A DNA stretch of 63,348 nt, the filler included, from Salisapilia sapeloensis CBS 127946 (taxonomy: Eukaryota; Protista; Oomycota): the NCBI GenBank assembly GCA_023334545.1. It is 12 parts of 12 records of this genome, joined end to end, with 100 filler letters (N's around TTAATTAATTAA, not from the genome) between each part and the next. Parts side by side here need not be neighbours in the genome. Positions count along the whole stretch, not along the records: positions 25,404 to 55,743 come from JAADVB010000223.1; 11 more parts are not named here. One strand, given 5' to 3'. The notes beneath the pieces are model-generated. The model was not told the origin of the DNA and did no database searches. It was given only the letters and a program-made list of their open reading frames with translations. The stretch's first letter is position 1. Each line of letters starts with the position of its first letter. Shown piece after piece: positions 1-51,316 of this stretch. The translations under genes and the position numbers were made by a program.

Positions 1-2611
1 TAAAACTCCTGCAGATGATCCAATTCGAGCATTGCCAAGTATAGAGCATCTCGAAGTGTTCGCTTGGCGAAAGTGATATCATCTTTGCACTAGATCCAAA
101 CAAGAGCATTCAATAATCTTAGGCTAGCACATCTTTACGTGCTTCATGTCAGATACATGGTGAATGAAAGACGGTGTCCTGGAGATTAAATCATCTACAT
201 ATGCAACCAAAAGAATTTGTTTAATGCATTACCTGTATGCTGCTTAATCGAAATACATCACCTTTATTTTCTTTTGAGTAACTGGAAAGTGTACCGCAGT
301 TTCCTTGATGACTGCTACCAAGGGCGCAGTCATCAAAAAGTATAGAAACTTTTTAATGTCCCTTAAATGAGACGTAGTACCTGAGTTGTTCACTTGTACA
401 AGAGAAAATACAGACAACGTGTACAGTTATGGACAATGCTCAAGTCAATTATAGTGACTATATTTACGTCTTACCGGCCGTAAGCATCCATGGCATCTAC
501 ATCGGTCGGGCTTAAACCTTCGCATTATAAGCACAAAGTACTCATCTGTCGAATCCCTGTGCTTTATTTTATACAACACGCACGAGTTCGAGAAAGTAAG
601 CGAGTAAATAGTCAATTTAGCTTTGGCAACTAGCCAAAGCGTCCAGAGACCAGAAATGAAGTTAGGACAATTGGCAATCTACTATGTACCGACTTTTGAA
701 TACAATACCGGTATGGGTCACTTGGGCGCGATCTCACTGAAATTTTACATGACAAACTGATGGCAATAGCACGTATCTCGATGGAGTTATAAGAGCTATA
801 CTATCTGCCTAGACACCGTTGCTACGAACTACTGCTATGCGGACTCCAGTTACTGTCCAGGACCATCTCAGGTTCCAGCTTGTACATTGCCAGAGTTTGC
901 CTAGCTCTTCTATACAAAGAGACATGAGCATGAACACCGCTCACTACAATATATAGAGTTGGACTGATTTTTTGTCTGAATCAACCGATCACTTTAGTCA
1001 CTTGTTATTCAACTCATCAAGTAGTTTCCATGATAGAGACCATAGACTCGATTATCTCGCATTTTTGGTTGTCATGCAAGGGATGAAAGCTTGGAAGACT
1101 GGTTGGAACTACACTTCAACTTTATTTCAAGAATAGCGTATAGTTTTCCATCTAATTTGTAGCTACTACTCCCATCTGAGAAGCACATTTGCAATCCTAA
1201 TGATGATCCCTCCTCCCTTCACTTCCGCCTCCGTGGTTATTCAGAGCAAACATCTCCAATTCCCTCCTCTTGTCGATGACGTAGCTGAATTCATCACTGC
1301 CTTCCCTGGACCATCTCTTAGTATACGCATTTTGAAAGCAAGTAGATATGGCTCGATCCATGTTCTCGAGCGATGGTGTGTCCTCGTCGAGTGCTCTGTC
1401 CCTCGTAAAGAGTAGAATGATGCAGTCACCAATGTTGCTCAAAGTGGTCGTTTAAACAGCATCATTAGCCTCCATTACTTCCGTCCAGACTGGCACCTCC
1501 CATTGGAAGCACTGAAAGCCGTTTCCATCCACAGACATTTGGCTTTAGCTTAGTAGACGTATCTCAATCGACCGTATGCGTCTTTTACCTACCGATGCAT
1601 GGATAATGCAGCTAGAGGAAGCCACTTGCAAAGAATCCAGTGGCTTCATTCACTCGGAGACGACTGTTGGAATAACAAGTCTGAGCTTCGGAAGGGAAAT
1701 CGGAGAGTGATTCACATAACTTTAATATGCAAATATAGAATGCGTATGCAGTCCATCTGATGACTGTTTCAACAGTAGTATTCAGTGTCCAGGTTGTTAA
1801 GTCGTCCTGGCTCCTCTGATGCGCCAGGTCTGGGGCTGGTGTCATCTTGGAAGATCACGAGGGGCTCCAAGGAAACGCTTACTCCAACAGAGACCACACA
1901 ATTACAAGGAGAGACTATGGCCGAGTTTATTTAGCAGACAATCGAGGATCGTGCGAGGAACAATAGACATTTATTGAACAAAGACAGTGAAATCTTAGTT
2001 GGTACCAAGCCTTCTAAATTCCTCTCTTTCTAATCGACAAAAAGATAGATGATATCGAGAGGGTATATCGATATAGGCATCATTTGTCCCAAAAGATATT
2101 TTCACAAGTGTTGCAAATCTCATACAACTCACGCCACAGCGAGCATGGCAACGGAAAACTCAATTTTGACATAGGGTGGAGCACGAGAGGCGAGATGTAT
2201 TAGCAATATAAAGCGACGTATCCATTGACACCACTGATCATTCGCTTTTGCACTTCTAATTTGGCAGGATAAATATATCGAAGTGTCGCGTTAGCTTTCC
2301 AATGGCAAGTGGCAGATCAAAATCGGTTATTCTCAGCAAGCACAGAATCGCCCGATTTGATTATCGTTATCAGAGTTACAAAATATGAATCCGAATTATG
2401 CCGACTAAGTACTTGGCGCGAACACGACCTACAGAACGCATATTGTAAGATAGAATTAAAGACGTGATCGAAAGATCGATATATAAATATATTTGTATAT
2501 ATAGCTACATATTTGTCTCCACGCAATTTAGCGGCTACTGCACAACAACAGAGTGTAGTCTTTGGTTCTTTATCCATTCCAACTGTTCATCAACCATCCT
2601 AACATGTTAAA

Positions 2612-33106: not shown

Positions 33107-34396
33107 CTACAAAGCAATCCTAGCGGTCTGATCGGCGATACTACGTTCTTCATCCGTAGGCAAGACCAGTACCTTGATCTTCGAGTTCTTGCTCTGGATC
33201 TCCGTTGGACCTTCTCCCATCATCGCCTGTCCGTTCTTCTCGTCATCCAGCTCGATGCCGACAAAGGCCAAGTCCTTGCAAACACGCTCTCGGATCATGG
33301 CACTGCTCTCGCCTGTGCCAGCCGTGAACACGATGGCTTGGCATTCACCAGCCAACTCGAGCAAGTACGCACCGAGGTACTTGCGCACACGATGCGCGAA
33401 CACGTCCAGAGCTAGAGCAGCTCGTTCGTCGCCTTCACGGACACGATCCTGGATGTGTCGGACGTCACTGTCTCCGCAAAGTCCGAGCAATCCGCTCTTC
33501 TTGTTCAACATCTTGTCCACGTCATCGAGCTTCATGTCGAGGTGGTTCGTGAGGAAAGAGTGGAGAGCAGGGTCGACGTCTCCACTGCGCGTGCCCATGA
33601 CCAGACCTTCAAGCGGCGTCACGCCCATGGTCGTATCGACACACGTTCCATTCTTGACTGCTGCCATCGACGCTCCGTTACCCAAGTGGCACGTAATAAT
33701 GTTGCACTCTTCTGTCTTGCAGCCGAGAATCGACGCAGCCTTCTCCGTAACGAACTGGTGAGAAGTGCCGTGGAAGCCGTAGCGACGAACGCCGTGCTTT
33801 TCATACAACTCATACGGAAGAGCGTACATGTACGCCTTGGGTGGCATGTCCGCATGGAAAGCAGTGTCAAAGACACCGACGTTCGGGAGCTTATTGCCAA
33901 AGACTTGCGTCGCGACGTCGATGCCCAGCAGACCTGGGGGGTTGTGGAGAGGAGCGAGACTCGCATTGCTCTCAATTGCTTCCTTCACCTGAGCATCGAT
34001 GAGCGCGGCCTGATGAATTTTCTCTCCGCCATGGACAATTCGATGGCCGATCGCAGCGAGGCCAGCCATGTCATCGGCGTGGAAGTATCTTTCGACAGCA
34101 GCCTGAAGTGCGTCCTTGTGCGAATGCAAGGGCAGCTCAACCTTTTCCTTTTTCTCCTCTCCACTTGGGCTATAGCTCGTGTGCTTAATACAACCGTCTT
34201 TGCCCTCGCTCGGCGAAAGCTCCACGAGACCAGAGAAGACGGGAGACCCGACCTGTTTGTCTTCCAATCCGAACATCTTGTACTTGAGCGACGAGCTGCC
34301 GGCGTTCAGTACTAGCAGACGAGCATCACTGTGGGCAGCGGACGAGAACGACCGGCGCAGAGGTGTAGATAGACGAAGAGAACGAGATGCGAGCAT
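33107..34396 (-). CDS. ackA: Acetate kinase with mitochondrial-type presequence
   Basis: LVLNAGSSSLK, GHRIVHGG, APLHNP, YGFHGTSH, HLGNGAS, GTRSGDVDP, PTDEE; N-terminus MLASRSLRLSTPLRRSFSS; first ATG at 34396. Confidence 0.93.
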   Translation of the reverse strand: MLASRSLRLSTPLRRSFSSAAHSDARLLVLNAGSSSLKYKMFGLEDKQVGSPVFSGLVELSPSEGKDGCIKHTSYSPSGEEKKEKVELPLHSHKDALQAAVERYFHADDMAGLAAIGHRIVHGGEKIHQAALIDAQVKEAIESNASLAPLHNPPGLLGIDVATQVFGNKLPNVGVFDTAFHADMPPKAYMYALPYELYEKHGVRRYGFHGTSHQFVTEKAASILGCKTEECNIITCHLGNGASMAAVKNGTCVDTTMGVTPLEGLVMGTRSGDVDPALHSFLTNHLDMKLDDVDKMLNKKSGLLGLCGDSDVRHIQDRVREGDERAALALDVFAHRVRKYLGAYLLELAGECQAIVFTAGTGESSAMIRERVCKDLAFVGIELDDEKNGQAMMGEGPTEIQSKNSKIKVLVLPTDEERSIADQTARIAL

Positions 34397-35868: not shown

Positions 35869-37299
35869 ATGGTGTTTCTAGCACTTGCAGCAGTCGTAGT
35901 AGCCGCATCCATCAGCACAACTCATGCTGGGTTGATTTACCCTCGTCCCATCACAGGACCTTTCAAGCTAAATGAAGTTACCAATACTTCTATGGCTTGC
36001 GGAGAAGACTTGGGCGAGGCCGTTGTAGCGTATTTCCCGGTGGGCGGTACTGTTGAAGCACAGTATCATCGCGACGTTGAAGATCACTATGGTGGAATTA
36101 TGAATGGATTTATTCGTTGGGCTCTGGTTCCCATTAATTCTATCAAGGAGAACCCGTCGGCAAGTGATTTTGACAACAATGTACTGCAGTACACCTGCAA
36201 CGGAGGCGATTTTGTGTCGTATCTATATGACGACGTAGAAAGAGTGCCGTATTATGAACTTGATGAAAAGTTTGGTATGACACAGGAAGAAAAAGAGATG
36301 TACAATGGATACGTGTGCAAAAATGAACTTGAGCTTCCGGACTCTCTTCCAGTCGGATTGTACAAGCTTCAATTTACCCGCTTCGGTGCCGTGAAGGCAA
36401 CTCGGACGAATGACGACGGCTGGGATACTGATGATTTCGAGTATGAAGTTAAGGTCGCTCCTGCAACTCCGCAACGCACGTGTGCCTACTTGAGAATCAA
36501 TGCCAAAGATGATACGGATTCTGACGAGGATTCAGCTACAGTTTCAGGCTTGGACTTGGACTCAAACTCAGGGTCCTTGGAATCAATAGATAGTTCTGGT
36601 TCCACTTCCGGCTCATTCCAGCCTGGTAAAGCACAAGGCAACCAGGAGACGGAAGATGATAGTGGTACGAGGAAGCCCTGGGATTGTTGGGGCTGCAGTA
36701 AAAATGACGACGACTCTGCGAATGGCTCCAATGGCAGCAAAGTTGACGTCGGTGACAGCGACAGCACTGATGCTAGTGGCGGATTTTTAAATAAGGACAT
36801 GTCTGCCTCCGCAGGTCATGCTGACTCGGATTCTAGTAGCGCGCATGGGTCTCGTGCTGGATCTCATTCTTCTCTAAGTGAAAGCCGCAGTATTAGTACC
36901 ATTGACGCTACTTCAGGTCAAGGCAGCGCTAGCAGATCTGAGGGCAGTTTACAAAGTACGGACATCTCAAGCACTGACACTGTTGTCGGAGACGATGATG
37001 GCGATGATAATCGGAATGAGGCCGCTGTAACAGTCCGGAAACTACAGGATACTTCAAATTCTGGTGATCGCACTAAAGTAGATCTCGGATGCCCCGAACT
37101 CAGCACCATATACATGTCTGGTATGGTTGGCGGGGAATGTTACTTTGCTTTTACGAACGAGATTGAGAGTGCGGAGGATTTGTCTACTATTTTGGAAAAA
37201 TTGATCCACCTCGATCTTTATTTTGGTATGTTTTTCGAAGACCTGCCGAAACCGTTTGAAAAGGGTCAGCCTGCCGATTTCAACCCTGATTGTTCCTAG
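35869..37299 (+). CDS. Secreted protein: H-x-x-L-x-x-P-x-P N-terminal domain, Asp/Ser-rich linker, small Cys-containing C-terminal domain
   Basis: Signal peptide MVFLALAAVVVAASISTT followed by HAGLIYPRP; long uninterrupted ORF; LPMO-like function is inference only. Confidence 0.75.
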   Translation: MVFLALAAVVVAASISTTHAGLIYPRPITGPFKLNEVTNTSMACGEDLGEAVVAYFPVGGTVEAQYHRDVEDHYGGIMNGFIRWALVPINSIKENPSASDFDNNVLQYTCNGGDFVSYLYDDVERVPYYELDEKFGMTQEEKEMYNGYVCKNELELPDSLPVGLYKLQFTRFGAVKATRTNDDGWDTDDFEYEVKVAPATPQRTCAYLRINAKDDTDSDEDSATVSGLDLDSNSGSLESIDSSGSTSGSFQPGKAQGNQETEDDSGTRKPWDCWGCSKNDDDSANGSNGSKVDVGDSDSTDASGGFLNKDMSASAGHADSDSSSAHGSRAGSHSSLSESRSISTIDATSGQGSASRSEGSLQSTDISSTDTVVGDDDGDDNRNEAAVTVRKLQDTSNSGDRTKVDLGCPELSTIYMSGMVGGECYFAFTNEIESAEDLSTILEKLIHLDLYFGMFFEDLPKPFEKGQPADFNPDCS

Positions 37300-38238
37300 A
37301 CACGCTATAAAGCGTTTAACAGAGGATCAAAATATCAAATGATGGCACCTTCATCTGCAAGCTAGCTCTTGTAGCTTCGTTTGTTATTTGACAAATAGTA
37401 ACTTACCGACATTTCCTCTGCAAGAATAAAAGTTGGCAAGCATATCTGCCACTAACTTTGGCATTTCATTTCATTCACGAACTCTACGAGATAAACTACT
37501 TTGTTCATGGTCCAAAGCAACGTACTGGCTCATCGAGATCGATAAATGATTCCAAGTGGGCTACTTTGTCCAGAAAAAGACGCAATTCAAACGTAAATTG
37601 AATTGATCGGATTTCACCGACCAAACTTGCAAATAGAGAACGCTGAGGCCGGTGTACTGGTGCACGAATAGCATGTACTGAGACGGACATTCGATATCAT
37701 AAGTAACTTGATGTCAATGCGCCTCACTTTCATTTTAATTCAACTGCCTTTGGCATCACCATTCATAGACACTCGACTGCATCCGCGTCTGGGTTCATAC
37801 CATGGCCTTTGGCAACAACATTCGCATGAGAAAAAACAGCAGCACCTGCTCCAGATGTATGCTCTATAGAATCCATATCCCCTGGACTACACTACTAAAG
37901 CTACAATACCACCAATACCTTTTCGCTACAAAAGTAATTGATTTCATTGCTCACACCTGAGGAGAGAATTCGCATGACACCACCCACGCATCCTCCGTGA
38001 CGATGTCCTGTAAACCCTCGTACATAACCTCGATACTTCATCTGGAACTGAAGTAGTCCTAATTTCGAGGGTTCGTATCGCACGCTTGACAACTACCTCC
38101 GTTCCGAAATCACCGCAACGTGCATCACAAAACGAAGTATTAACTGTACCTACTAAACTGATATCGAGGTACACTCCCGATCGCTCGTCGTTCACAATCC
38201 GAAATCGCCGCAAGATCCCAAGCGCTCTTCCATCCGTC

Positions 38239-39921
38239 ATGGCAGAGTCCTTCGATAACTTCCTTGCCGAGGGCAAAGGCAACGCCCCTGAGCCGCTCAT
38301 CTCGGGCACGCTATACAAGCGCCCGGAGAAGAACTCTTTGCTGTGGAAAAAGCGATACTGCGTCATTTACAAGAACGCGTCGTCACCACAGATTGTCTAC
38401 TTTGAGAGTGAAGAGGCTTTCCAGGAGGGACGTGTCCGCGGAAAGATCTCGTTCTCGTCTGTCCACGCGTGGGACGGAAAGCCCTATGGCATCCAGTTCT
38501 ACACGCCCACTAACAAACTCTACCGCGTCTACTGTGAGAATGACGAGGAGCAAAAGCAGTGGCTCAGCACCATGCAGCAAGCCATTGACGCCACGCCCGA
38601 CATGGGGGATGGTACCTCCGTTCCGCACGACCGACCGGTCGTTTCCTCCCCGACATCTTCCCCGAAATCGTCGGACGGATCGCCCGAAAAGGCTCGATCC
38701 TTCCGCAAGGCTCGCCAAGACTCGTGGCGTGAGGAGGATGGCGACACGGCTGCCATGACACAGGAGCTAGAGGACTTGCGTAGCGAAGTCGCCACTCTCC
38801 GTGCCGAACTCGTGTCGTACGAAAAGACCGAGCAGAAGTTTGCTCCGGAGATCAAGAAGCTGCGTACGCGTCGTGGTAGTATCCTAGACGACGGTACCGA
38901 GGTCGATCTCAACCCTCGTGAGATGGAGCGCATGCGTGGTATCTTCGACCTTTTCGACACGCAGGGCAACGGATGCATCTCTGAAGACGACTTGATCGAC
39001 CTCCACGCCAAGCTTGGTGAGCCGATCACGGCTGAGGAGGCCAAGGAGGCCGCAGCGTACATGCAGCCGGAGGGAGGCAAGATCAACTTCGACTCGTTCA
39101 TCAAGTGGTGGAACGACGACCACTCGAGCAGCAGTCAGACGGAGGCCATGAAGCGCTACCAGGCCAAGTTCAAGTTCCTCAAGGCTCGTATCGCGAACCC
39201 TCAGATCGGCAACCTCGAGACGCTGAGTGAAGGCCCGTTCCCGAGCTTTGAGTTCCGTCTCCAGTTCTTCCATAACAACCCCAAGGACGGTACGCGCGAG
39301 CAAATCTCTCCGTGGCACGATATTCCGCTCTACAATGCGGACGGAAGCGTCAACTTTATCTGTGAGATCCCCAAGTGGACGCGAAAGAAGATGGAGATTG
39401 CCACGGGCGAACCGTTCAACCCGATCAAACAAGACACCAAGAATGGTAAACTGCGCGAGTACACGTGGGGAGACATGATGTTCAACTACGGCTGCCTGCC
39501 GCAGACGTGGGAAGACCCGGCGCACGTGACGGAGGGCACCGGATGCATCGGTGACAACGATCCGATCGATGTGCTCGAGATCGGTACCAAGCAGTGGCGC
39601 ACGGGTGCTGTTGTCCAGGTCAAGATCCTAGGTGTCCTTGCCCTCATTGACGATGGTGAGACGGACTGGAAGGTCCTGTGCATCAATGTGGAGGACCACT
39701 ACGCGTCGCAGATCCACGACGTGGCGGACATTGAAGCGCACATGCCTGGCTGCATTACTGCCATCCACGACTGGTTCCGTGACTACAAGGCTCCTAAGGT
39801 CAACAAGTACGGCTTTGAGGGCCGATGCCTCAGCCGCGACTTTGCGGAGGACGTAGTGGCCGAGACGCACGAGTTCTGGAAACTGCTCATCCAGGAACGT
39901 GGTGGTCAGGCCACGGTCTAG
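38239..39921 (+). CDS. PH domain/coiled coil/EF-hand/family I inorganic pyrophosphatase fusion
   Basis: PH: GTLYKRPEKNSLLWKKRYC...QWLSTMQQA; EF-hand: FDLFDTQGNGCISEDDL; PPase: ISPWHDIPL, EIPKWTRKKMEI, NPIKQD, NYGCLPQTWEDP, GDNDPIDVLEIG, IDDGETDWKV, WFRDYK. Confidence 0.92.
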   Translation: MAESFDNFLAEGKGNAPEPLISGTLYKRPEKNSLLWKKRYCVIYKNASSPQIVYFESEEAFQEGRVRGKISFSSVHAWDGKPYGIQFYTPTNKLYRVYCENDEEQKQWLSTMQQAIDATPDMGDGTSVPHDRPVVSSPTSSPKSSDGSPEKARSFRKARQDSWREEDGDTAAMTQELEDLRSEVATLRAELVSYEKTEQKFAPEIKKLRTRRGSILDDGTEVDLNPREMERMRGIFDLFDTQGNGCISEDDLIDLHAKLGEPITAEEAKEAAAYMQPEGGKINFDSFIKWWNDDHSSSSQTEAMKRYQAKFKFLKARIANPQIGNLETLSEGPFPSFEFRLQFFHNNPKDGTREQISPWHDIPLYNADGSVNFICEIPKWTRKKMEIATGEPFNPIKQDTKNGKLREYTWGDMMFNYGCLPQTWEDPAHVTEGTGCIGDNDPIDVLEIGTKQWRTGAVVQVKILGVLALIDDGETDWKVLCINVEDHYASQIHDVADIEAHMPGCITAIHDWFRDYKAPKVNKYGFEGRCLSRDFAEDVVAETHEFWKLLIQERGGQATV

Positions 39922-42051: not shown

Positions 42052-43090
42052 ATGAATCTCCTTCTATCGGTGATTAACGTCGTCGTGTCGATCTCATCGA
42101 CGTACATGAGTATTAGCCCGACAACGGCGATGTACCGGATTCACAAGCACAAGTCTACTGGTCTGGCGTCCGTCGTTCCGCTTGCTGCTTTATGGTTTTG
42201 CAACAACACTTGGTGGGTTGCTCTATGGCTACTGCATTAATCATTTCAATTCTAATATCTCGACTTCGCATTATAGGATGATGTATGGCATTCTCAAAGG
42301 GGTTCTATTTCCTCTTATTATCACCAACGCAGTTGGGAGTGTCTTCAGTATTGGCTATTTGATGGTTTTCTACCAACACACCATGGATAAACGCTTCGTT
42401 TTATTTTGCTGCCTGATAGCGTTGATGACCAATACAGTGGTTGCCACGTACGCAATGCTAGGGAAAGCGCTTGTTTTCGGGCAAGCATTGGAAACTGTGA
42501 CAGATATCGTTGGATATATTGGCATGACTTCTAGCTTTATGCTTTACGCCTCACCTTTTATTCAGGTGGCTCAAGTGTTAAAGACCAAAACTTCGGAATC
42601 CATTCCGATCCTGATGTCTACCGTTGGGACTTTAAATAACTTGCTTTGGATCATATATGCATACTTGGCAGGGGATAACCTTATTCTTATTCCATCCACG
42701 GTCAACTTCTCCTTCGGCGTCTTGCAAATCATCCTCTTCATATTATACCATCCACGCATTCAAGGATTGAATCACGGCATCAAGAACTTTAACACGGTCA
42801 CTCTTGGAGCAATCCAGACAGTCTCAAGTGAAGTGCTCGAAGCGATTCATCCATTGAAACAAGGCGAGCTCATTTTCGATATGATCGCACCAAGCGTTAT
42901 CGTGCCGGTTGAAACGAATGTAGAATCGTGTAAAGTTTATGCGGATCCATCCAATTTAACTTCTTCTGAGTCTCTTGACACGGACGTTGTGGAGGCAGTT
43001 GACAGCACCACCTCTTTTAACTATGACAGCTCAAGTAATTTAGTGGAGCGAAACGTTGCCAGCGATACACTTGAGGACACAACCGAGTAG
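42052..43090 (+). CDS. SWEET: SWEET/MtN3 sugar transporter (intron 42213-42276)
   Basis: Two MtN3 repeats (SPTTAMYRIHKHKSTG; YASPFIQVAQVLKTKTSESIP...WIIYAYL...IPSTVNFSFGVLQIILFILY); a 64-nt intron restores the frame; long acidic tail. Confidence 0.88.
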
Positions 43091-43695
43091 CTTCCCGAGT
43101 CACGTTTAATACTTTACTACACTAGTCAACTCAAGAAGCGTACGTAGCCTCACAAGCTTCACTAAGCTTCCTTTTCCGTCGGATACATCACGACCTACCC
43201 TGCTTGTATCCAAAACAACCAACATGCTAATAATTCAAACAAAATTATACATAAACTTGCTTGACATCTCTGCAAATCAGCTCTGTATGGATCAGTTTTC
43301 GTAGTAACCTATCCGTCATTCTAACTAAACATCAATTAAACTTTTAATATATTAATTAAAACAAAATAAAAGTTCACGATTTTGCTTTCGGTAGGAACCC
43401 ACAGCAACAAAATTCTAGTTATGTACCTGGCTAAAAAGGGGCTGAGTATCCTTAAGACGTAGTGCATGGCGGGTGATATCTCGACGGATTCTGCTATAAA
43501 CATCACTTTACGCTGCTTAGATTTTAAAGAACCGCTACCTACCGTGGTACTTATAATCGATCCTTTACTGCACGAAACACGTTTACTCCCATTTGGCAGA
43601 GTACTTGTAGATACTTGTAAGCATGCCCTGGTAATAATAGTAATAAACCCATAAACACCAAACCCATGACAACATTTCATGTTTATGATTTCAAC

Positions 43696-45553
43696 CTATA
43701 GCAGAGGACGGTATTCATCTTGGCGGCGTTTTAACGTGATCATGGCAAACGCAACGGCACCGACAACTGCAACGAGTCCTGCTGTACCAGCCACTAGTAA
43801 GGTAGAACTGTGCACGTCAGAGGTAGTGGCAGACAGGCTGACAGCGTACTCTGATCCTTGAAGGATTTCGCTTCGGGGGGCATCAAGCATTTCCTGTGTC
43901 ATGCACTTGGTTTTGGACAGATTCGCAAACCAATTGGCTGCAGGACGAGGAAGGCGCTTCAGGTCAGAAGCCTTTGGTTCGTAAATCTCATGTGAACCAA
44001 CTTGTGGCGGGAAGTCGACGTAGTAGAGCCCGAAGCGCGGTTCAAAAGATCCCCATTCCTATTACATAGCAATGTCAGCAGGTCATTTGCATTTCGAATA
44101 CGAACGTAATCTTACATAGTTGTCCAGAAGCGACCACGCAGTGTATCCGATGATCGGAATGTTCTCTTCGTAGATGGCCTTGTGCACCTGGTCAAGGTAC
44201 GCCTGGTAGTACCACAATTGCGTCTTACTCTCGATGATATCATTGCCACAGTATCCATTTTCAGTCAGAAGGATGTCTGCCTTCGGGTCAAACGAATGGG
44301 TGTACTTGATGTTTTGCATGTAGCCTTCAGGATGAGCTGCCCACGACGGACAGTTGTAATCACCCTTTCGGTTCTTCGCGGCCATGACGGAGTCTTCAAA
44401 GAACTGAGTCTGCCAATCCAGTCCCATATCTTTTTCAAATCCAGGCACAAGACTCTCGCACTTAATGTTTGACCTCGGAGAGTCACAGTCAGTAACCAGC
44501 CAGGACGTGTAGTGGTTAACCATGAAGAGATCATACGATCCCTTCACAAGAGCTTCTTCTTCCTCGGAGAACTCCGGGAGACGGTCGCCAACGCGCTCTC
44601 GCATAATAGCAGGATACTTACCCGTCGTAATAGGGCTAAGCCACCATCCAATGAAGAATGAGTTCAATCGCTCGGCAGCATCGATATCCGCCTGGCTGTC
44701 CGAATCAACTGGGTAGGAACCACCCATAGGAATCACAATACCAATGCGAGCATCATCTCGTACGACACCTGCTGTCTTGAGGTTGCGGAAGTTGGCTACG
44801 GCTCTGGCATGCGAAAGTAGGATGTGATGCGTGACAACGTACGTATCTGTGTCTGATCCGGACATACCAGGAGCCATGCGACCATTGCCGTACCCAAAGT
44901 ACGACGTTACGATAGGCTCATTAAAAGTAGACCAGTACTTCACCTTCTCTCCAAACTCGTGGAAGATGAGAGTGGCGTACTCTTCGTAGTGGCTGATGAT
45001 CTCCGGGTTGATCCAGCTTGGAGGAGAAAGCTCCGTGTGCAACTCAGATGGGAGGTCCCAGTGGTAGATCGTGAGGATTGGCTCGATGTTCTTTTCAACG
45101 AGCTTGTCGACTACAGCATGGTAAAACTTGATTCCCTCTGGATTAGGCTTCATTCGTTCGGTCTCTGGATCCCAGTTCATCACACGAGACCAGGATATGG
45201 AGAAACGGAAGGTATCATGGCCGTCAGCAACCATCAGATCCACATCCGAAGCGTAGCGGTGAAAGAAATCATCAGCAACGTTGGCGCATGCTCTTTCTTC
45301 ACTTTCACGACAAAAGCTATAGGCGTAAATTTATTAACAACCAGAATTATTTTAACGATTATAGCAAGACGTACTCATCCCAGATACTTGGCGTACGTCC
45401 ACCCTCTTCTACAGCCCCCTCAACTTGATAAGATGCAGTAGCAGAACCAAAGAGGAAGTTGTCAGGGAAGCATTTGGTTTCTTCTGAAGCAGCGGACGAG
45501 GATACCAGTGCGACCGTGGCAGTAGCTGCCAAAGTCCATATCTTTCCCAGCAT
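43696..45553 (-). CDS. GH1 beta-glucosidase, secreted and C-terminally membrane-anchored (introns of 58 and 57 nt)
   Basis: [33 protein letters not shown] (acid/base), LTENG (nucleophile), DNY|[16 protein letters not shown]; signal peptide; C-terminal TM helix followed by [11 protein letters not shown]. Confidence 0.92.
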
Positions 45554-46831
45554 GATCGGCTCTTATTTTAATGCAAGTGGGAGTCGAAATGAACTCGTTG
45601 GATGCTTGGATGAGAGAAGAGCATCAAAACGTAGTGATTGAAGTTCGCTGCATCCTGATCAACTTGATTACCATCTGCTTGAAGTCGAAGCATTTAGATA
45701 TCGCTCGACTTTAATTTGCCTGTGGCTTTCTTCTCTAGCACTTGGGTTGGGCAATGTGAAATTACTGGAAAAGTACTTGGGACTAGGTCCATTATGAACG
45801 GAAAATTTGTCTGCATTTCTGTAAATATACGCTGACAAAATATCTTCATTGACGAGAGGATGGTGCCTTGGTCCTGATGAGATATCTCGGCAACGAAAGT
45901 ATATCGAATGGTAGCTAAATAAAAGAAGAGCTGACTGAAGATACGCTGGATATTCTCCAGTCAATTGAAATTTAGGACGTCGCCTATTAAGATAAGCATG
46001 CTCAACAAACTTCTTATCCTTTGCAACAATAAAATCGAAATCGTAGGTTGGCATTTAAATATCTATTGCATACTTGTTTTCGAGCGATTCGTGGACTTGC
46101 TTTCGAATAAAGCCAAGTACCTTTACATTGATCTTCAAATGTGCTTCTTTCCTATTTATTGTCAATATGGCGCGATAGCGAGACTACGCTGTAGCAATGG
46201 TACAAGCCCTCCTCCATAGGAGCTTTTATCTATTATAGTCTCAACTTAAACAAATGCTATCATATATCCCGCTAATGGTGAAGACGATATATTAAAGTTT
46301 CGATGGTTGACTACCGGCAACGAGAATCCGTACTAAAGTCGATCGGCTACTATCGTCCTTTAACCAAGGTTACTACGCCAAGCCGAACGAAGCAAGTCTG
46401 ACCATCATGAAGACACGCCGGTCTCGGTCCAGAGATGCGGATACGGCGATCCTCCTACCTTTTACACACATAACCATACCAATATTCAGGAGGTTACCAT
46501 GATTGCCCACAAAAGATAATTCCATCTTCCGATAGCTGTCCAACAAAGTCATCGCGGACAATAAAGCTGTGAAAACTACAAGTCTATGCCCAATGTACCG
46601 GGGATAGTTCACATGACTGGAAGGAGTTCGGGTGGCGTAATAGTTAACAAGGACTGCAATATCTTTCAATTGATAAGACTCCTTTCATCGCAGTAGACTG
46701 GATAGAAAACGTGTAGCTAAGAAATGAAAGAGCTCAGACTATGTGCAAATTGAACAGTTGAAGGGAACGGACCAGAGCATTGAACAATGACTTCATATGA
46801 CATAGTAGCGTCCGTACGTAGCAACGCTCGC

Positions 46832-47539
46832 TTACTCATCCGCTAACCGACCAACTATGACGTATTTTTCTTTAAATTTCTTCACCCAGTCGTCAAGCAC
46901 CTTTTGCTGTTCATCCGTCAAGTCGTCGACTCTCGGATCATCCAGATCGGCCTCACTGAGTGACATGCAGGCGAGGGCTCTTGTCACATCTCTTCCAGCA
47001 AACTGGCCGTACATACCTTGTTCAGGATGATAAAACTCTTTCCCTGTCAACGTGACATCGTATATCTGTCCAGCGACAGCTACGAGGATTTCCTTTCGTG
47101 GGTCCTGTACACCATCATACCTTTGCAATTCTTCTCTTGTCATGTCTCTTGTCATAACGATACGTCCGACAATTTGCACCTGCTCCTCTTCCAGTAGCTT
47201 TTCCTGCCATTGTGCCATTCGACTCATCATCTCCTCTTCCAGATCTCTCAAATCCTCTTTGCGAACGACATTCTTCTTGTCGCCTGTTGCAACTGCATAC
47301 GACACATCTTTTCCAGCCCACATACAAAGCTCTCCATTCGGACCATACTCATCCGCCAAGCTGGTCACGTCATAGACATCACTCGCGACAGATATATAAA
47401 TTGGAAGTCCACATCTTCCATTAAAAGCTTCTAACTCATCAAAAGTAAAGCAGCGTCCAGAAGGATCCCTCTCATCGCCTGTCGGCCGTGGCGGAAGTAC
47501 CTTCGGACCTTTTGGATTCGTCGCCACGGCATTTCCCAT
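46832..47539 (-). CDS. Tandem cytochrome b5-like heme/steroid-binding (MAPR) protein
   Basis: Two repeats: FTFDELEAFNG...VYDVT...YGPNG..MWAGKDVS and MTREELQRYDG...IYDVT...FYHPEQGMYGQFAGRDVTRALA...W...F..KY..VGRL; N-terminus MGNAVAT. Confidence 0.88.
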   Translation of the reverse strand: MGNAVATNPKGPKVLPPRPTGDERDPSGRCFTFDELEAFNGRCGLPIYISVASDVYDVTSLADEYGPNGELCMWAGKDVSYAVATGDKKNVVRKEDLRDLEEEMMSRMAQWQEKLLEEEQVQIVGRIVMTRDMTREELQRYDGVQDPRKEILVAVAGQIYDVTLTGKEFYHPEQGMYGQFAGRDVTRALACMSLSEADLDDPRVDDLTDEQQKVLDDWVKKFKEKYVIVGRLADE

Positions 47540-47671
47540 CGTGTACAAGTGAAAAACGAAACGGGCAACGTAACAAGTCCATGATAACGCGCAAGATCAA
47601 GTAATTTATGCAAAGGTAGAGTGTACTTGCGTTTATAAATACCACCTTGGGCATATTTCTACAATAAACAA

Positions 47672-49813
47672 CTAGGCAGTTGGCGAGGAAGTCGGGTGCA
47701 GACGGACACGAGCGATCGCGTCTTCCAAAGTAATGGATGGATCTCCTGCTACTAATCGCTTGCTCAGCTTGGACGCAGTCATCATATCACTGATACGACC
47801 ATTGGCATGCGCAATGCCGAGGCAAAGATCTTTCCTCGCGAGCTTCTCCTCCAGATCGGAAAGCACCTGCAACGTCGTTGCGTCCATATCGTTCATGTGT
47901 CTCGCATCCAGGACGACTCCCTTGATCTCGACATCGAGACTGTTCACGCGAGAAAGCTCTTGCTCGATACACACGACGACTCGTTCGCAGTTGGCAAAGT
48001 ACAGAGAGCTCTCGACTCGCAACGCCACCACATCCTCCAACACTGAAGTGTACGGGTACATGCTTCGGTCCACGAGGCTTCCGTCGTCGAGCTCTGCCAG
48101 GACAGCGACAGGCTGCGTCTTGGTCTTGTACATGAGCGCCAGGACGGACGAGATAATGGAGGCAAAGAGACCGTTGAGGACACCAAGGCCGAGCGTCAGG
48201 ACGAAGGCTGCGAGCCAGACGAAGAACTCGTCTTTTTTCACCTGGTACAGCCACTTGGCTTCATGCATCTCCACAAGAGAGCTGCCGGCGACGATGATGA
48301 TGGCCGCTAGACTCGCTGCTGGGAGGTAGTACAGCGCACTCGTCATGGTGTAGAGCGCGATGATGATGATCAGGACGGTGCAAATGGACGCCAGTTGCGT
48401 ACGCGCATTCTGCATGTTGACAGCCGTGCGGGACATGGCACCAGTCGATGGGATGGCGGTGAGGAAACCGCAGACGATACTGGCCATGCCGAGACCCATG
48501 AGCTCCTGGTCCGTGTTAATGTCCTCTCCACGCTTAATCGCTAGTCGCTTGGACATGGCGATAGATGAAAGGTACACGACGGCGGCAATGGAGCATGCGT
48601 GGCCGATCATGCTGCCAAAGTCACCTGCATCCAGCAGCCCTTCGTTGAAGCCATACCATGGCACACGAGGGGTGCCATATCCACTAGGCACATCACCTGT
48701 GAGCTCGAGACGCTCCGGACCGACAATATAGCCGACGACACCGCCGAGGATGCAGACGATGAGAGGTCCGAGGTCGCATACGGTCTTAGCGACGAAGAGG
48801 AGCAAGAGCGTCGTCTTGGACATGGGTTTCTCCTGCTCTTCTTCTCCAAACGGATCCACTTCGTCCTTTTCAACGACGGTCGTGGGAGACTCCGGAACAG
48901 CGGATCGCTGCGCTTGCATGTGCTCCATACTGACGTACTGTTGATCTGTCAGAGAGAAGCCGTGGCTCTGATTGTTCGAGTTGACAGGCGTGAGGACCAT
49001 CGGGTTCTGCTGCGTGCCAGATCCGTAGCTGAGTGACTCGGATTCCTCATCTTTCGTCGTATCTGCGTCTTCCTCAAAGATGCTGTTTAAAGAAATCTGT
49101 GCGAGGAACTTGCGTTTGATGATCCGGAGCGATAGAAGGAGGACGATGGAGACGAGACCGAGCACGAAGCTCGTGATATTCGTGTGTGGAATGCTCTCCA
49201 AGACACGGTAGACGGTTACGGGCGGAAAGTCTTCGTGCTTGACCTTGACATCCAGCCAGTTCTTGACCTGCGACAGCATGATGAGGAGACCACCGGCTGA
49301 GATGAAACCTCCCATGACCGGACGAGAGAAGAAGTCGGCGATCTGACTTAGATTAAGCGCTCGGAGGACGAGAAGGATGGCGCCAGAGAGGAACGAGTAG
49401 AAGACGACGGTCGCTGTACGCGTTTCTTCATCCTCAATGTCACTAACAGTCGATCCGACCAGTAAAGACACTTCGGATCCACTCGCGACGGAGAGGACGG
49501 TCGAGCTACCGAACAAGGCGTAGATGAAAGGAGCAGAGGCAGCTGTGTAGAGTCCGTGCTCCGGTGCGACCTGCATCAGTTTCGACAAAGAAACTTCCTG
49601 TGGAATGAGCATCATGGCGACGGTGATGCCGGCAACGATGTCAAACATAAGATCGCGCTTGACATTGTACTGCGGCAGCCATTGGAGGATCGGAAGTAGG
49701 TACTTGACTCGCTCCTTAGCAGTCGGCCGTCGTACTTGCAAGTGGAAAGATGAGTCGTGGGACGCCTGGCTACTGGACGACGCGCCATTTCGACGTTGGT
49801 GTATCTCGGACAT
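47672..49813 (-). CDS. SulP/SLC26 anion transporter with STAS domain
   Basis: PILQWLPQY, DIVAGITVAMMLIPQ, FFSRPVMGGF, NTDQELMGLG, GAMSRTAVN, STAS RVESSLYFAN...VVLDARHMNDMDAT; first methionine ATG at 49813. Confidence 0.92.
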   Translation of the reverse strand: MSEIHQRRNGASSSSQASHDSSFHLQVRRPTAKERVKYLLPILQWLPQYNVKRDLMFDIVAGITVAMMLIPQEVSLSKLMQVAPEHGLYTAASAPFIYALFGSSTVLSVASGSEVSLLVGSTVSDIEDEETRTATVVFYSFLSGAILLVLRALNLSQIADFFSRPVMGGFISAGGLLIMLSQVKNWLDVKVKHEDFPPVTVYRVLESIPHTNITSFVLGLVSIVLLLSLRIIKRKFLAQISLNSIFEEDADTTKDEESESLSYGSGTQQNPMVLTPVNSNNQSHGFSLTDQQYVSMEHMQAQRSAVPESPTTVVEKDEVDPFGEEEQEKPMSKTTLLLLFVAKTVCDLGPLIVCILGGVVGYIVGPERLELTGDVPSGYGTPRVPWYGFNEGLLDAGDFGSMIGHACSIAAVVYLSSIAMSKRLAIKRGEDINTDQELMGLGMASIVCGFLTAIPSTGAMSRTAVNMQNARTQLASICTVLIIIIALYTMTSALYYLPAASLAAIIIVAGSSLVEMHEAKWLYQVKKDEFFVWLAAFVLTLGLGVLNGLFASIISSVLALMYKTKTQPVAVLAELDDGSLVDRSMYPYTSVLEDVVALRVESSLYFANCERVVVCIEQELSRVNSLDVEIKGVVLDARHMNDMDATTLQVLSDLEEKLARKDLCLGIAHANGRISDMMTASKLSKRLVAGDPSITLEDAIARVRLHPTSSPTA

Positions 49814-51316
49814 GCCTTGTCGACGTAAGAAGAAATTGTGGAATGAAACTTCGCCTCGAGTCGATGGTCCTCCATGATGCTGCGACGAGAAGAGGTGGCG
49901 GCCGAGGAAGAGATGATTGGGTCGCGGTCGATGACGTGGTTTGGGCGGGTACATACAAAAAGCAAGGTAGATCTTGGCATGGGGATAGGGGACACAGTTG
50001 ACAGCCAATAAGATAAAAGGCGTTTTATAGCAAATTGGAAGGTCGCTAGGGACGAGACGATGAAGAGGAGATAAAGGGGAAAAGTAGGCACGAGCTACAA
50101 GGCTTTTAGAGTCTTACTAGCCAGTGTGTAAAGGGCTGGGCCGGATGGAATCGAATGCGGGACGAGCGGCTAGATACTTGTAGACGAACATAAAGTAGCC
50201 AGACTTGGAAGTTTGATTAATCGAGGTTGGATATTAGCGAATGAAAAAGCAGTAAAGTATACATGAAAGCCAATCAAATAGTTTGATTTTGGGCTGTTTG
50301 CGTGTTCGCCAGGCAACGGACACTACAGCTCCGATCCAATTGATAGCAGTATACATACTGATAAGGCAGCCTCTCCTTAACGCACTCATCATAGCTCTAT
50401 AATAAGTCTAGAATAAAAGTACTAGACACGTGATACGTACTGCACATATCCATAAGGCAACCTCTACGTGGTAAAGTCCTTGAAGATGGAGGACCCGCCG
50501 AATATATGGAAACCTAGCACAGAAAAGAATCTACGTCACGAAGTAAAGTAGCTGTAGACCTGACTTGATCAGTATGGAGCAACGTGAGCAGGCTTTGCCC
50601 TTAGTTGCTTCTCTTGTTGCCACCCACTGGAATCTGCTTGCACCACCCACTGCCGATGTCTTTTTTTACTTCTATTCCTCATCTATCGGATCTGTGCTTT
50701 CAAGATCCTTTCACTAAAGCACGCCCTACGCCTCGTTTCGCTGGTCTCTCTCACTTACAACTGCCTCGAGATTGTCATGCTTTTACGTCTATAAACGTAT
50801 CTTTCACCTTCACTACGGACAATCGATAAGATGACAGTGCTCGTGTTTCTACATCTTATACATACCAGAGTTGGTCATTATCCAACATTTTGAGGCGCTA
50901 TCTATAATTGTCTAAAAGATGTATATACTTATTACTTTGTGTTTTAAATTAATTTTACTTCATGCTGTCTTCTTATCTTTCCTATCGATAGCTTCTTCTT
51001 AGTCAATTGCACATCACCGCTCTTGATACTTTACGCATACTTGCGTTTCCATTCATATGCAGTTCACACCCCTCCTCCTGTCTTCTCGGATGAATTTAAA
51101 GTCATTCTAGCACTGAAGGTCCAATGTCAACTTTACCTTGGAACTACCAGCTACGACCATGGGCACTCGACAAGCATCGCTATCTATTACATAGACATAT
51201 TTCATCATACTCGGGATTCAGTTTAAAGTAGCAAGTACATTTGAGCACAACTTTTTGTTTCTTTTCGATTTACGTGCAACGATGCCGTCGACCATGGCAT
51301 CCTCAACTACCTCCGA

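What the first reader, a model, noticed from the sequence alone, without database searches (positions are those of the whole stretch)
35869..36530. Candidate histidine-brace (LPMO-like) copper protein outside the familiar families
Seen: a signal peptide directly followed by H-A-G-L-I-Y-P-R-P (His codon at 35923), a second His in EDHYGG...GFIRWALVP, four Cys, and LPDSLPVGLYKLQF plus a late QRTCAYLRI strand. Known: LPMOs and related copper proteins need His1 of the mature chain plus a second His on a beta-sandwich that often has LP..L..G.Y.LQ and YxxC elements. Inference: a divergent His-brace protein in which the usual axial Tyr position appears to be Gln, implying altered copper chemistry. Caveat: cleavage could instead fall after THA, removing the His.
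Basis: inference. Interest (0 to 1): 0.72.

Follow-up and report, generated by a model that had tools for sequence, protein, structure and literature searches.

The report
Divergent secreted LPMO-like copper protein
This eukaryotic gene encodes a secreted protein whose first domain has the fold and both copper-holding histidines of lytic polysaccharide monooxygenases, yet it fits none of the curated families and may lack the usual aromatic residue under the copper.

Summary
An intact 476-codon ORF (35869-37299, +) starts with an 18-residue hydrophobic signal followed by His (35923). Pfam, NCBIfam and PDB sequence searches of the protein alone find nothing. An exhaustive search of 1.8 billion cluster representatives finds two true relatives at about 30% identity. 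One belongs to an oomycete family of LPMO-annotated proteins. In 33 relatives His1, His55 and four Cys are invariant. A family profile aligns His55 with the copper-binding His86 of AA9 enzymes. An AlphaFold model (pLDDT 73) matches only LPMO-type structures at the top of an exhaustive search (AA15 Z 13.8; AA10, AA13, AA11, AA9, X325). The residue three positions before the conserved Cys, which is the axial Tyr/Phe position, is Gln184. A 12-residue insertion leaves Phe172 as an alternative, and I had no model coordinates to decide. Signal-peptide cleavage before His rather than after Ala20 is inferred from homology, not shown. Seven family-invariant residues are changed. RNA-like contigs cover the gene, but their only splice is antisense, so sense expression is unproven. 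Verdict: a divergent member of the LPMO superfamily. Copper binding is likely. Catalysis and substrate are unknown.

The parts
35869..35922 (+). Signal peptide, 18 residues (MVFLALAAVVVAASISTT). The first in-frame ATG has a good initiation context.
   Evidence: All 33 relatives carry a signal peptide ending directly before the aligned His.
35923..35925 (+). His1 of the inferred mature chain, the N-terminal half of the histidine brace.
   Evidence: Invariant in 33/33 relatives, with Pro at +6 also invariant. Model residue 1 aligns with residue 1 of LPMO crystal chains.
35923..36510 (+). LPMO-fold domain, about 196 residues, with four invariant Cys (mature 26, 92, 132, 187).
   Evidence: AF2 pLDDT 73, pTM 0.74. 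VIA Z 13.8 to AA15 5msz, and the first 23 rows of the exhaustive search are all LPMO-type. Foldseek gives AA15 at E 1.7e-5.
36085..36087 (+). His55 (mature numbering), the second histidine of the brace, in D-H-Y-G-G.
   Evidence: Invariant in 33/33 relatives. The family profile aligns this column with the first His of the S-H-H-G-P motif in AA9 chains. That residue is His86 of TaAA9A by my own knowledge of the structure.
36436..36438 (+). Phe172, the alternative candidate for the axial aromatic residue.
   Evidence: MAFFT and HMMER both align it with the family F/Y (18 F, 15 Y), which leaves a 12-residue insertion before R-T-C.
36472..36474 (+). Gln184, three residues before invariant Cys187. 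This is the register of the axial Tyr/Phe (Y/F-x-x-C).
   Evidence: Relatives have F/Y-[RKV]-[STP]-C. AA9 and AA11 chains align Y-x-x-C there. AF2 starts the strand at residue 184, and residues 181-190 have pLDDT 87.
36511..37014 (+). Ser/Asp/Gly-rich, probably disordered C-terminal region that includes a CWGC motif.
   Evidence: Composition S42, D26, G22 in 175 residues. No family hit. Such tails occur in about 60% of LPMOs (PMC8615602).
37015..37299 (+). C-terminal segment of about 94 residues with three Cys, then the stop codon. Fold unknown, and the 3' gene model is uncertain.
   Evidence: No Pfam or atlas hit. Single-sequence AF2 gave pLDDT 40. High-depth contigs end at 37200/37212, and GGTATGT lies at 37225-37231.
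36486..36539 (-). 54-nt stretch skipped in RNA-like contigs, with GT..AG ends only on the minus strand. Probably an antisense intron.
   Evidence: The joint appears in runs X2, X3 and X4 and not in DNA run X1. The sequence was read.

Best explanation
The gene encodes a secreted protein with three parts: an N-terminal domain that is a highly divergent member of the LPMO superfamily, a long acidic Ser/Asp-rich disordered tail, and a small Cys-containing end segment. After signal-peptide removal, His19 becomes residue 1. Its amino group and imidazole, together with the imidazole of His55, form a histidine brace holding one copper ion on the face of a disulfide-stabilised beta-sandwich. Once reduced, the copper would react with O2 or H2O2. 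The protein would then either oxidise a cell-wall or extracellular polysaccharide or act as an H2O2-producing oxidase. The position under the copper is probably Gln184 instead of Tyr/Phe, which would alter the copper's redox tuning and its protection against self-oxidation. Shown here: the ORF, the homology, the conservation pattern and the predicted fold. Inferred: the cleavage site, copper binding, the identity of the axial residue, and any activity.
For: - **ORF:** intact, with a signal peptide followed directly by His.
- **Relatives:** the only true relatives in 1.8 billion representatives are P0001 and the oomycete LPMO-annotated family of P0003. Pairwise BLASTP gives 1e-14 and 2e-15.
- **Conservation:** His1, Pro7, His55, GF-R and four Cys are invariant across 34 sequences.
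- **Independent profile:** a family HMM built without the window scores it at 54.6 bits.
- **Link to solved LPMOs:** the family profile hits AA9 crystal chains (7ova at E 6.8e-5) with the brace His and the axial Tyr columns aligned.
- **Pfam:** 18 of the 34 sequences in alignment A1 hit AA9 and 19 hit DUF7492 (the window sequence hits neither).
- **Fold:** the AF2 model matches AA15 at Z 13.8, then AA10, AA13, AA11, AA9, X325 and AA16. Every one of the top 23 rows in the exhaustive search is LPMO-type. ESM Atlas shape and feature neighbours are all LPMO-type.
- **Selection:** in a variant 5' contig, five of the six changed codons after His1 are silent in the + frame, which points to purifying selection.
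- **Architecture:** a disordered Ser-rich tail is typical of LPMOs (PMC8615602).
Against: - **Direct sequence hits:** none to any curated LPMO family or solved structure for this protein alone.
- **Cleavage site:** STT|HA has Thr at -1, and THA|GL also fits the -3/-1 rule. Cleavage there would remove the His.
- **Changed residues:** seven residues conserved in at least 31 of the 33 relatives are changed (R10I, N51D, N54D, D146L, W151F, W153R, D189Y). The N/Q/E-x-F/Y motif is not met.
- **Model quality:** confidence is only moderate, with loops 54-57, 95-108 and 166-169 below pLDDT 50. I had no coordinates to measure the His-His distance.
- **Expression:** sense-strand expression is not shown. 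The only splice seen is antisense.
Confidence: 0.6

Rival explanations
1. It is a non-catalytic copper-binding or copper-handling protein of the LPMO fold, working like fungal X325/Bim1. It would capture extracellular copper with the histidine brace, perhaps with help from the acidic tail, and pass it to the cell surface instead of oxidising a polysaccharide.
For: - LaX325 is among the structural matches (Z 10.7). BIM1-like clusters appear among the Atlas neighbours.
- Many residues conserved in the enzyme-like relatives are lost, while both His are kept.
- The axial aromatic residue is possibly missing.
- The long Asp/Ser-rich tail could bind cations.
Against: - No Pfam BIM1-like hit for the window protein.
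- The domain is about 196 residues with long loops, closer to the enzymatic families (AA15 Z 13.8) than to the roughly 140-residue X325 core.
- No hydrophobic GPI-type C-terminus in the current gene model.
- No third acidic copper ligand could be identified without coordinates.
Confidence: 0.2
2. It is a degenerate LPMO-fold protein without a histidine brace. The signal peptide is cut after Ala20, so His19 is lost, and the domain serves as a structural, adhesive or carbohydrate-binding wall protein.
For: - THA|G has the preferred Ala at -1, while STT|H has the less common Thr (sequence; the -3/-1 rule is from my own knowledge).
- Seven family-invariant residues are replaced, and the aromatic W-x-W patch is lost.
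Against: - His19 and His55 are both retained despite about 70% divergence from relatives in which they are invariant. The H-x5-P spacing is also kept.
- The variant allele keeps TT-H-A-G, although its signal peptide differs.
Confidence: 0.15
3. The + strand ORF is not the expressed product. The locus is mainly transcribed as a spliced antisense RNA, and the LPMO-like ORF is silent or decaying.
For: - The only joint in the RNA-like contigs is a 54-nt intron with GT..AG on the minus strand. It is absent from the DNA run.
- High-depth contigs stop about 90 nt before the sense stop codon.
Against: - A 476-codon ORF is intact. Antisense ORFs are at most 125 residues and of low complexity.
- Five of six changed codons in the variant contig are silent in the + frame.
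- The ORF is homologous to a protein family with functional residues kept.
Confidence: 0.05

Closest known systems
Oomycete LPMO-annotated family (e.g. P0003 of Pythium oligandrum, P0021 of Phytophthora infestans, 'putative lytic polysaccharide monooxygenase 9') and the unnamed Logan protein P0001
   Same: - They are the only sequence relatives found, at 25-32% identity.
- They share the signal peptide followed by His, H-x5-P, H-x-G-G...F-I-R-W, L-P-x-x-L-x-x-G-x-Y-x-L-Q and [RK]-[ST]-C-A.
- They share four invariant Cys and a Ser/Thr/Pro-rich tail.
   Different: - The window protein changes residues conserved in at least 31 of the 33 relatives: R10, N51, N54, D146, W151, W153 and D189.
- It has insertions around His55 and a 12-residue insertion before R-T-C.
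- It has Gln where the relatives have F/Y directly before [RKV]-[ST]-C.
- It lacks their conserved C-P-x-F-V-G-G-D-R module after the domain.
- It gets no Pfam hit, whereas 18-19 of the 34 sequences in the alignment hit AA9 or DUF7492.
- I could not establish the CAZy family of these relatives. Neither AA16 7ZE9 nor any entry described as AA17 appeared in sequence searches.
AA15 LPMOs (TdAA15A, PDB 5MSZ; copper site His1/His91/Tyr184, PMC5823890)
   Same: - It is the best structural match: Foldseek E 1.7e-5, and VIA Z 13.8 with 148 residues aligned, 1..195 onto 1..195.
- It is eukaryotic and secreted. The family has been reported in diatoms, other algae and oomycetes (PMC5823890).
   Different: - Sequence identity is 18% and rmsd 4.9 Å.
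- There is no Pfam LPMO_10 hit, which is how AA15 members are usually recognised.
- The axial Tyr is not evident in the window protein.
AA9 and AA11 fungal LPMOs (Pfam PF03443; e.g. 7OVA, 2YET, 4MAH)
   Same: - The family profile reaches AA9 chains at E 6.8e-5 to 0.02, with the brace His, the L-P..G-Y-V-L motif and Y-x-x-C aligned.
- AA11 aligns over the W-T-W-F...Y-x-x-C-A segment.
- VIA Z is 10-11.
   Different: - The window protein alone scores below every reporting threshold against PF03443.
- The second-sphere Q-x-Y motif is absent.
X325 / Bim1 LPMO-like copper proteins (LaX325, PDB 6IBH)
   Same: It has the same fold and a histidine brace (Z 10.7). It is a precedent for a brace protein that handles copper rather than cleaving polysaccharide (as summarised in PMC8615602).
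   Different: X325 is a smaller domain. It is GPI-anchored and uses an extra Asp ligand (my own knowledge). No BIM1-like Pfam hit and no GPI-type C-terminus are seen here.

Membership tests
LPMO superfamily (histidine-brace copper proteins) | A histidine that aligns with residue 1 of the mature chain, directly after a secretion signal | tested here: met
   His19 follows an 18-residue hydrophobic signal. It aligns with the invariant first mature His of 33 relatives and with residue 1 of LPMO crystal chains.
LPMO superfamily (histidine-brace copper proteins) | Signal peptidase cleaves immediately before that His, freeing its amino group | not testable with these tools
   No signal-peptide predictor was available. 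Both STT|H and THA|G satisfy the -3/-1 rule. Homology favours the former.
LPMO superfamily (histidine-brace copper proteins) | A second conserved copper-binding His | tested here: met
   His55 is invariant in 33/33 relatives. It is aligned with the brace His of AA9 chains.
LPMO superfamily (histidine-brace copper proteins) | Immunoglobulin-like beta-sandwich LPMO fold | tested here: met
   AF2 pLDDT 73, pTM 0.74. The top 23 rows of the exhaustive structure search are all LPMO-type, with Z from 13.8 down to 8.8.
LPMO superfamily (histidine-brace copper proteins) | The two His side chains adjacent in space | not testable with these tools
   Model coordinates are not exposed. Only alignment ranges are returned.
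LPMO superfamily (histidine-brace copper proteins) | Axial Tyr/Phe within the N/Q/E-x-F/Y motif (PMC6420742) | tested here: inconclusive
   Gln184 occupies the position three residues before Cys187. Phe172 aligns with the family aromatic residue only if a 12-residue insertion follows it. The motif itself is not present in either register.
LPMO superfamily (histidine-brace copper proteins) | Copper binding and oxidative activity | not testable with these tools
   Requires experiment.
Pfam AA9 (PF03443) | Profile score at or above the gathering threshold of 27.8 bits | tested here: not met
   No hit at E<=10 for the window protein. Relative P0003 reaches 29.8 bits and P0001 reaches 25.0.
Pfam LPMO_10 (PF03067; AA10 and most AA15) | Profile hit | tested here: not met
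   No hit at E<=10.
X325 / BIM1-like (PF20238) | Profile hit, and a C-terminal GPI-type hydrophobic signal | tested here: not met
   No hit. The C-terminus ...KGQPADFNPDCS is not hydrophobic, although the 3' gene model is uncertain.
CAZy AA16 / AA17 | Sequence similarity to a characterised member (MtAA16A 7ZE9; the characterised oomycete AA17) | tested here: not met
   Neither 7ZE9 nor any entry described as AA17 appears at E<=10 in PDB sequence searches with the window domain, the family profile, P0021 or P0010. 7ZE9 gives structural Z 8.8, and no entry described as AA17 is listed in the top 50. dbCAN models were not available.

The most novel reading that the evidence does not exclude
This is the first seen member of a separate, possibly algal or stramenopile, lineage of histidine-brace proteins. 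In it the axial Tyr/Phe is replaced by Gln and most second-sphere and surface residues of the nearest family are replaced. That would give a copper site with different redox behaviour and a new substrate, or a copper-handling role, possibly coupled to an acidic Ser/Asp-rich tail.
Probability: 0.3. Interest if true: 0.7.

Novelty: new variant of a known kind. Interest (0 to 1): 0.52.

Why it matters
LPMO families have repeatedly been found by spotting a signal peptide followed by His on an unassigned beta-sandwich. Each new family has brought a new substrate or role, such as pectin attack in oomycetes, copper import in fungi and cuticle turnover in insects. This protein keeps the brace but differs from its nearest relatives at most other conserved positions, possibly including the residue beneath the copper. 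No relative closer than 34% identity turned up among 1.8 billion cluster representatives. If it binds copper with a Gln in the axial position, it would be a natural test case for what the axial Tyr/Phe contributes to LPMO chemistry. It could also point to an unrecognised copper enzyme or copper-handling protein in a small-genome eukaryote, probably a stramenopile.

Tried and rejected
- **Direct family and structure-sequence searches.** Pfam, NCBIfam and PDB sequence searches with the protein alone found nothing.
- **Word-index protein searches.** Two searches, with the domain and with the full length restricted to the domain region, returned nothing.
- **Noise in the exhaustive search.** P0002, P0004 and P0005 are cadherin or LRR repeat proteins matched over 30-60 residues. 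I treated them as noise.
- **Metagenome scan.** It returned only L002. That locus has stop codons and no ORF, and its match is seeded by the search pattern itself. I rejected it as chance.
- **Paralogues.** There is none in the piece.
- **C-terminal segment.** No Atlas neighbour. Single-sequence AF2 gave pLDDT 40, which is unusable, so I did not search with it.
- **Organism.** Run and organism names are coded. An exact look-up of the neighbouring acetate kinase and of the protein itself found nothing. The gene content is eukaryotic.
- **CAZy family of the oomycete relatives.** PDB searches with P0021 and P0010 hit neither 7ZE9 nor any entry described as AA17. No paper mentions DUF7492. The AA17 paper is not held.
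- **Sense-strand reading of the 54-nt skip.** Rejected because its ends are non-canonical on the + strand and it would delete the last beta-strand of the domain.

Full report
**Observation**

The piece carries an intact ORF on the + strand from ATG 35869 to the stop at 37297-37299, 476 codons. A stop lies 19 codons upstream, there is no other in-frame ATG before 35869, and the start context is A at -3 and G at +4.

The product begins MVFLALAAVVVAASISTT, followed by HAGLIYPRP with the His codon at 35923.
- the second His, in EDHYGG...GFIRWALVP (mature His55);
- four Cys in the domain (mature 26, 92, 132, 187);
- LPDSLPVGLYKLQF and QRTCAYLRI.

After the domain, which ends near 36510, come about 170 residues rich in Ser, Asp and Gly that contain a CWGC motif. 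A final 94-residue segment with three Cys follows.

**Genomic setting**

The neighbours are ordinary eukaryotic genes: RINT1, CBF/Mak21, acetate kinase, a PH/EF-hand/pyrophosphatase protein, Myb, SWEET, GH1 and SulP. They are mostly uninterrupted ORFs, and G+C is 40-58% in 1-kb windows. The organism is coded in the read tools. Its contigs total about 24 Mb. I cannot name it. The nearest relatives of this protein are in oomycetes, so a stramenopile is a reasonable guess and no more than that.

**Relatives**

The protein alone has no hit in Pfam, NCBIfam or PDB sequences at E<=10. Two word-index searches found nothing.

The exhaustive phmmer search of 1.84 billion cluster representatives found five proteins at E<=0.001. 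Three of them are cadherin or LRR repeat proteins matched over short stretches, and I discard them. The two real ones are:
- P0001, 185 aa, from a Logan assembly of SRR9993447;
- P0003, 324 aa, from Pythium oligandrum.

Pairwise BLASTP gives 1e-14 and 2e-15 at 29-32% identity. The exact sequence is not in the 15-billion collection, and no representative is closer than 34% identity.

P0003 belongs to a family present in several copies per genome in Pythium, Globisporangium, Phytophthora and Nothophytophthora. Its members are annotated as 'lytic polysaccharide monooxygenase', 'AA9 domain-containing' or 'chitin-binding type-4'. Of the 34 sequences in alignment A1, 18 hit Pfam AA9 and 19 hit DUF7492. 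The window sequence hits neither.

**Conservation**

In the 34-sequence alignment A1, these positions are invariant: His1, Pro7, Cys26, Gly41, Arg50, His55, Gly62, Phe63, Arg65, Cys92, Cys132 and Cys187. In every relative the His follows a canonical signal-peptide end such as VDA|H, VEA|H or VLG|H.

An HMM built from the 33 relatives without the window row scores the window domain at 54.6 bits, E 5e-19.

The A1 profile reaches AA9 crystal chains (7ova 6.8e-5, 7a8v 7.8e-4, 5x6a, 2yet), AA15 5msz (0.046) and AA11. In the printed alignments:
- the family R-N-N-H-x-G-G-F-I-R lies on W-P-E-S-H-H-G-P-V-I, with the family His on the first His of that pair;
- the family F/Y-R-S-C lies on Y-P-Q-C.

By my own knowledge of TaAA9A, those are His86 and Tyr175, the second brace histidine and the axial tyrosine.

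**Fold**

An AlphaFold2 model of the mature domain, built with A1 as the alignment, has mean pLDDT 73 and pTM 0.74. Its beta-strands are confident and its loops weak, with residues 54-57, 95-108 and 166-169 below 50.

- **Foldseek against the PDB:** AA15 5msz comes first (E 1.7e-5), then AA9, AA11 and AA10.
- **Exhaustive VIA-align search of 48,161 chains:** the first 23 rows are all LPMO or LPMO-like (one search agrees).

| Family | PDB chain | Z |
|---|---|---|
| AA15 | 5msz | 13.8 (148 residues aligned, rmsd 4.9 Å) |
| AA10 | 4oy7 | 12.4 |
| AA13 | 4opb | 11.5 |
| AA11 | 4mai | 10.9 |
| fusolin | 4yn2 | 10.9 |
| AA9 | 5nns | 10.7 |
| X325 | 6ibh | 10.7 |
| NIS1 | 8xgl | 10.1 |
| AA16 | 7ze9 | 8.8 |

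  AA14 5no7 follows at Z 8.4, two rows lower, and generic Ig-like folds fill the list from Z 8.6 down.
- **Residue 1:** model residue 1 aligns with residue 1 of chains numbered from the mature His.
- **ESM Atlas:** neighbours by sequence features and by shape are again all LPMO-type.

The fold claim is therefore well supported. I could not measure the His1-His55 distance because coordinates are not returned.

**The axial position**

All 33 relatives have F (18) or Y (15) directly before [RKV]-[STP]-C. This is the same Y-x-x-C spacing as in AA9 and AA11.

The window has Q-R-T-C, so Gln184 sits in that register. AF2 begins the last strand at residue 184, and residues 181-190 have pLDDT 87. TdAA15A, the best structural match, has its axial Tyr at residue 184 of a chain aligned 1..195 onto model 1..195 (PMC5823890). 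That is suggestive only.

Against this, both MAFFT and HMMER align G-W-D-T-D-D-F172 with the family G-W-A-E-P-Q-F. That puts a 12-residue insertion (EYEVKVAPATPQ) between Phe172 and R-T-C. A hairpin insertion could in principle leave Phe172 near the copper.

My estimate is Gln184 about 60%, Phe172 about 30%. Neither register reproduces the N/Q/E-x-F/Y motif described for LPMO families (PMC6420742).

**Divergence from the relatives**

Seven positions conserved in at least 31 of the 33 relatives are changed in the window protein: R10I, N51D, N54D, D146L, W151F, W153R and D189Y. There are also insertions on both sides of His55. The window protein lacks the C-P-x-F-V-G-G-D-R module that follows the domain in the oomycete proteins.

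Both histidines and all four cysteines are retained against this background. I read this as selection for the metal site and the fold, with a changed surface and second sphere. It is why I favour copper binding while leaving catalysis open.

**Cleavage site**

No signal-peptide predictor was available. STT|HA has Ser at -3 and Thr at -1, which is allowed but not preferred. THA|GL has Thr at -3 and Ala at -1. Two things favour His as residue 1: the alignment of His19 with the invariant first mature His of all relatives, and the conserved H-x5-P spacing. A variant contig in run X3 has a different signal-peptide sequence but keeps T-T-H-A-G.

**Transcription**

Four runs of the same coded organism hold the stretch. 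Contigs from three runs guessed to be RNA cover about 35915 or 36067 to 37200/37212 at depth 33-121. Depth in the flanks is 3-6.

One contig carries a variant 5' end. Of the six changed codons after His1, five are silent in the + frame and one gives R8L. This fits purifying selection on the + frame.

The only joint skips 36486-36539 (54 nt). Its ends are CT..AC on the + strand, which is GT..AG on the minus strand. It is absent from the DNA run, and in two runs it coexists with the unspliced form. In the sense frame it would remove AYLRINAKDDTDSDEDSAT, which includes the last beta-strand. I take it as an intron of an antisense transcript. The antisense ORFs are at most 125 residues and of low complexity.

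Contigs cannot show strand, so sense expression is not demonstrated. The high-depth contigs end about 90 nt before the stop codon, and a GGTATGT lies at 37225-37231. The last roughly 24 codons of the gene model are therefore uncertain. This does not affect the N-terminal domain.

**Function**

The architecture is a catalytic-type domain followed by a long Ser-rich disordered tail. That arrangement is the commonest one in LPMOs (PMC8615602).

The best-supported reading is a secreted copper protein with an LPMO-type histidine brace. Three functions remain possible:
- cleaving a polysaccharide;
- producing H2O2, as reported for AA16 proteins (PMC10088020);
- handling copper, like X325/Bim1.

None of these can be decided from sequence.

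**Comparison with what is known**

The protein works like an LPMO-superfamily protein but fails the membership tests I could run for AA9, LPMO_10 and BIM1-like. It shows no sequence link to the solved AA16 protein, and no entry described as AA17 appeared in any search.

LPMO_10-type domains are already reported in diatoms (bioRxiv 10.64898/2026.07.09.737548; PMC5823890). An LPMO in an alga would therefore not be new in itself. What is new here is the degree of divergence and the possible loss of the axial aromatic residue. I rate it a new variant of a known kind.

Noticed in passing
window 36486-36539 (minus strand): A 54-nt skip in RNA-like contigs of three runs has GT..AG ends only on the minus strand and is absent from the DNA run. 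An antisense spliced transcript probably overlaps the gene. Spliced and unspliced forms coexist.
   Followed up: partly
window 35915-35968 and upstream: A variant contig (run X3) differs at seven listed positions. Five of the six changed codons are silent in the + frame and one gives R8L. Upstream of 35915 it carries a different signal-peptide sequence that still ends ...CTT before HAG. It is probably a second allele or strain variant.
   Followed up: partly
window 35969-36014: In the DNA run, a 46-nt contig at about twice the depth of its neighbours (85.6 against about 42) breaks the assembly here. This short stretch is shared with another copy or haplotype.
   Followed up: no
window 37200-37231: High-depth RNA-like contigs end at 37200/37212, about 90 nt before the stop codon, and a GGTATGT donor-like site lies at 37225-37231. 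The 3' end of the gene model may be wrong.
   Followed up: no
window 36685-36696: A CWGC (CxxC) motif sits within the Ser/Asp/Gly-rich tail. Redox-sensitive Cys in disordered tails have been noted for AA11 and AA15 LPMOs (PMC8615602).
   Followed up: no
window 33110-34396 (minus strand): An acetate kinase gene (Pfam E 5.6e-139) is transcribed divergently from the LPMO-like gene across a 1.5-kb intergenic region. Its N-terminal extension looks like a targeting peptide.
   Followed up: no
window 38086-39921 (+): One ORF combines PH, EF-hand and inorganic pyrophosphatase domains, an unusual fusion.
   Followed up: no
window 42182-50008: Three sugar- or anion-related genes lie within 12 kb downstream: SWEET (42182-43090 +), GH1 beta-glucosidase (44083-45243 -) and SulP/STAS transporter (47672-50008 -).
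   Followed up: no
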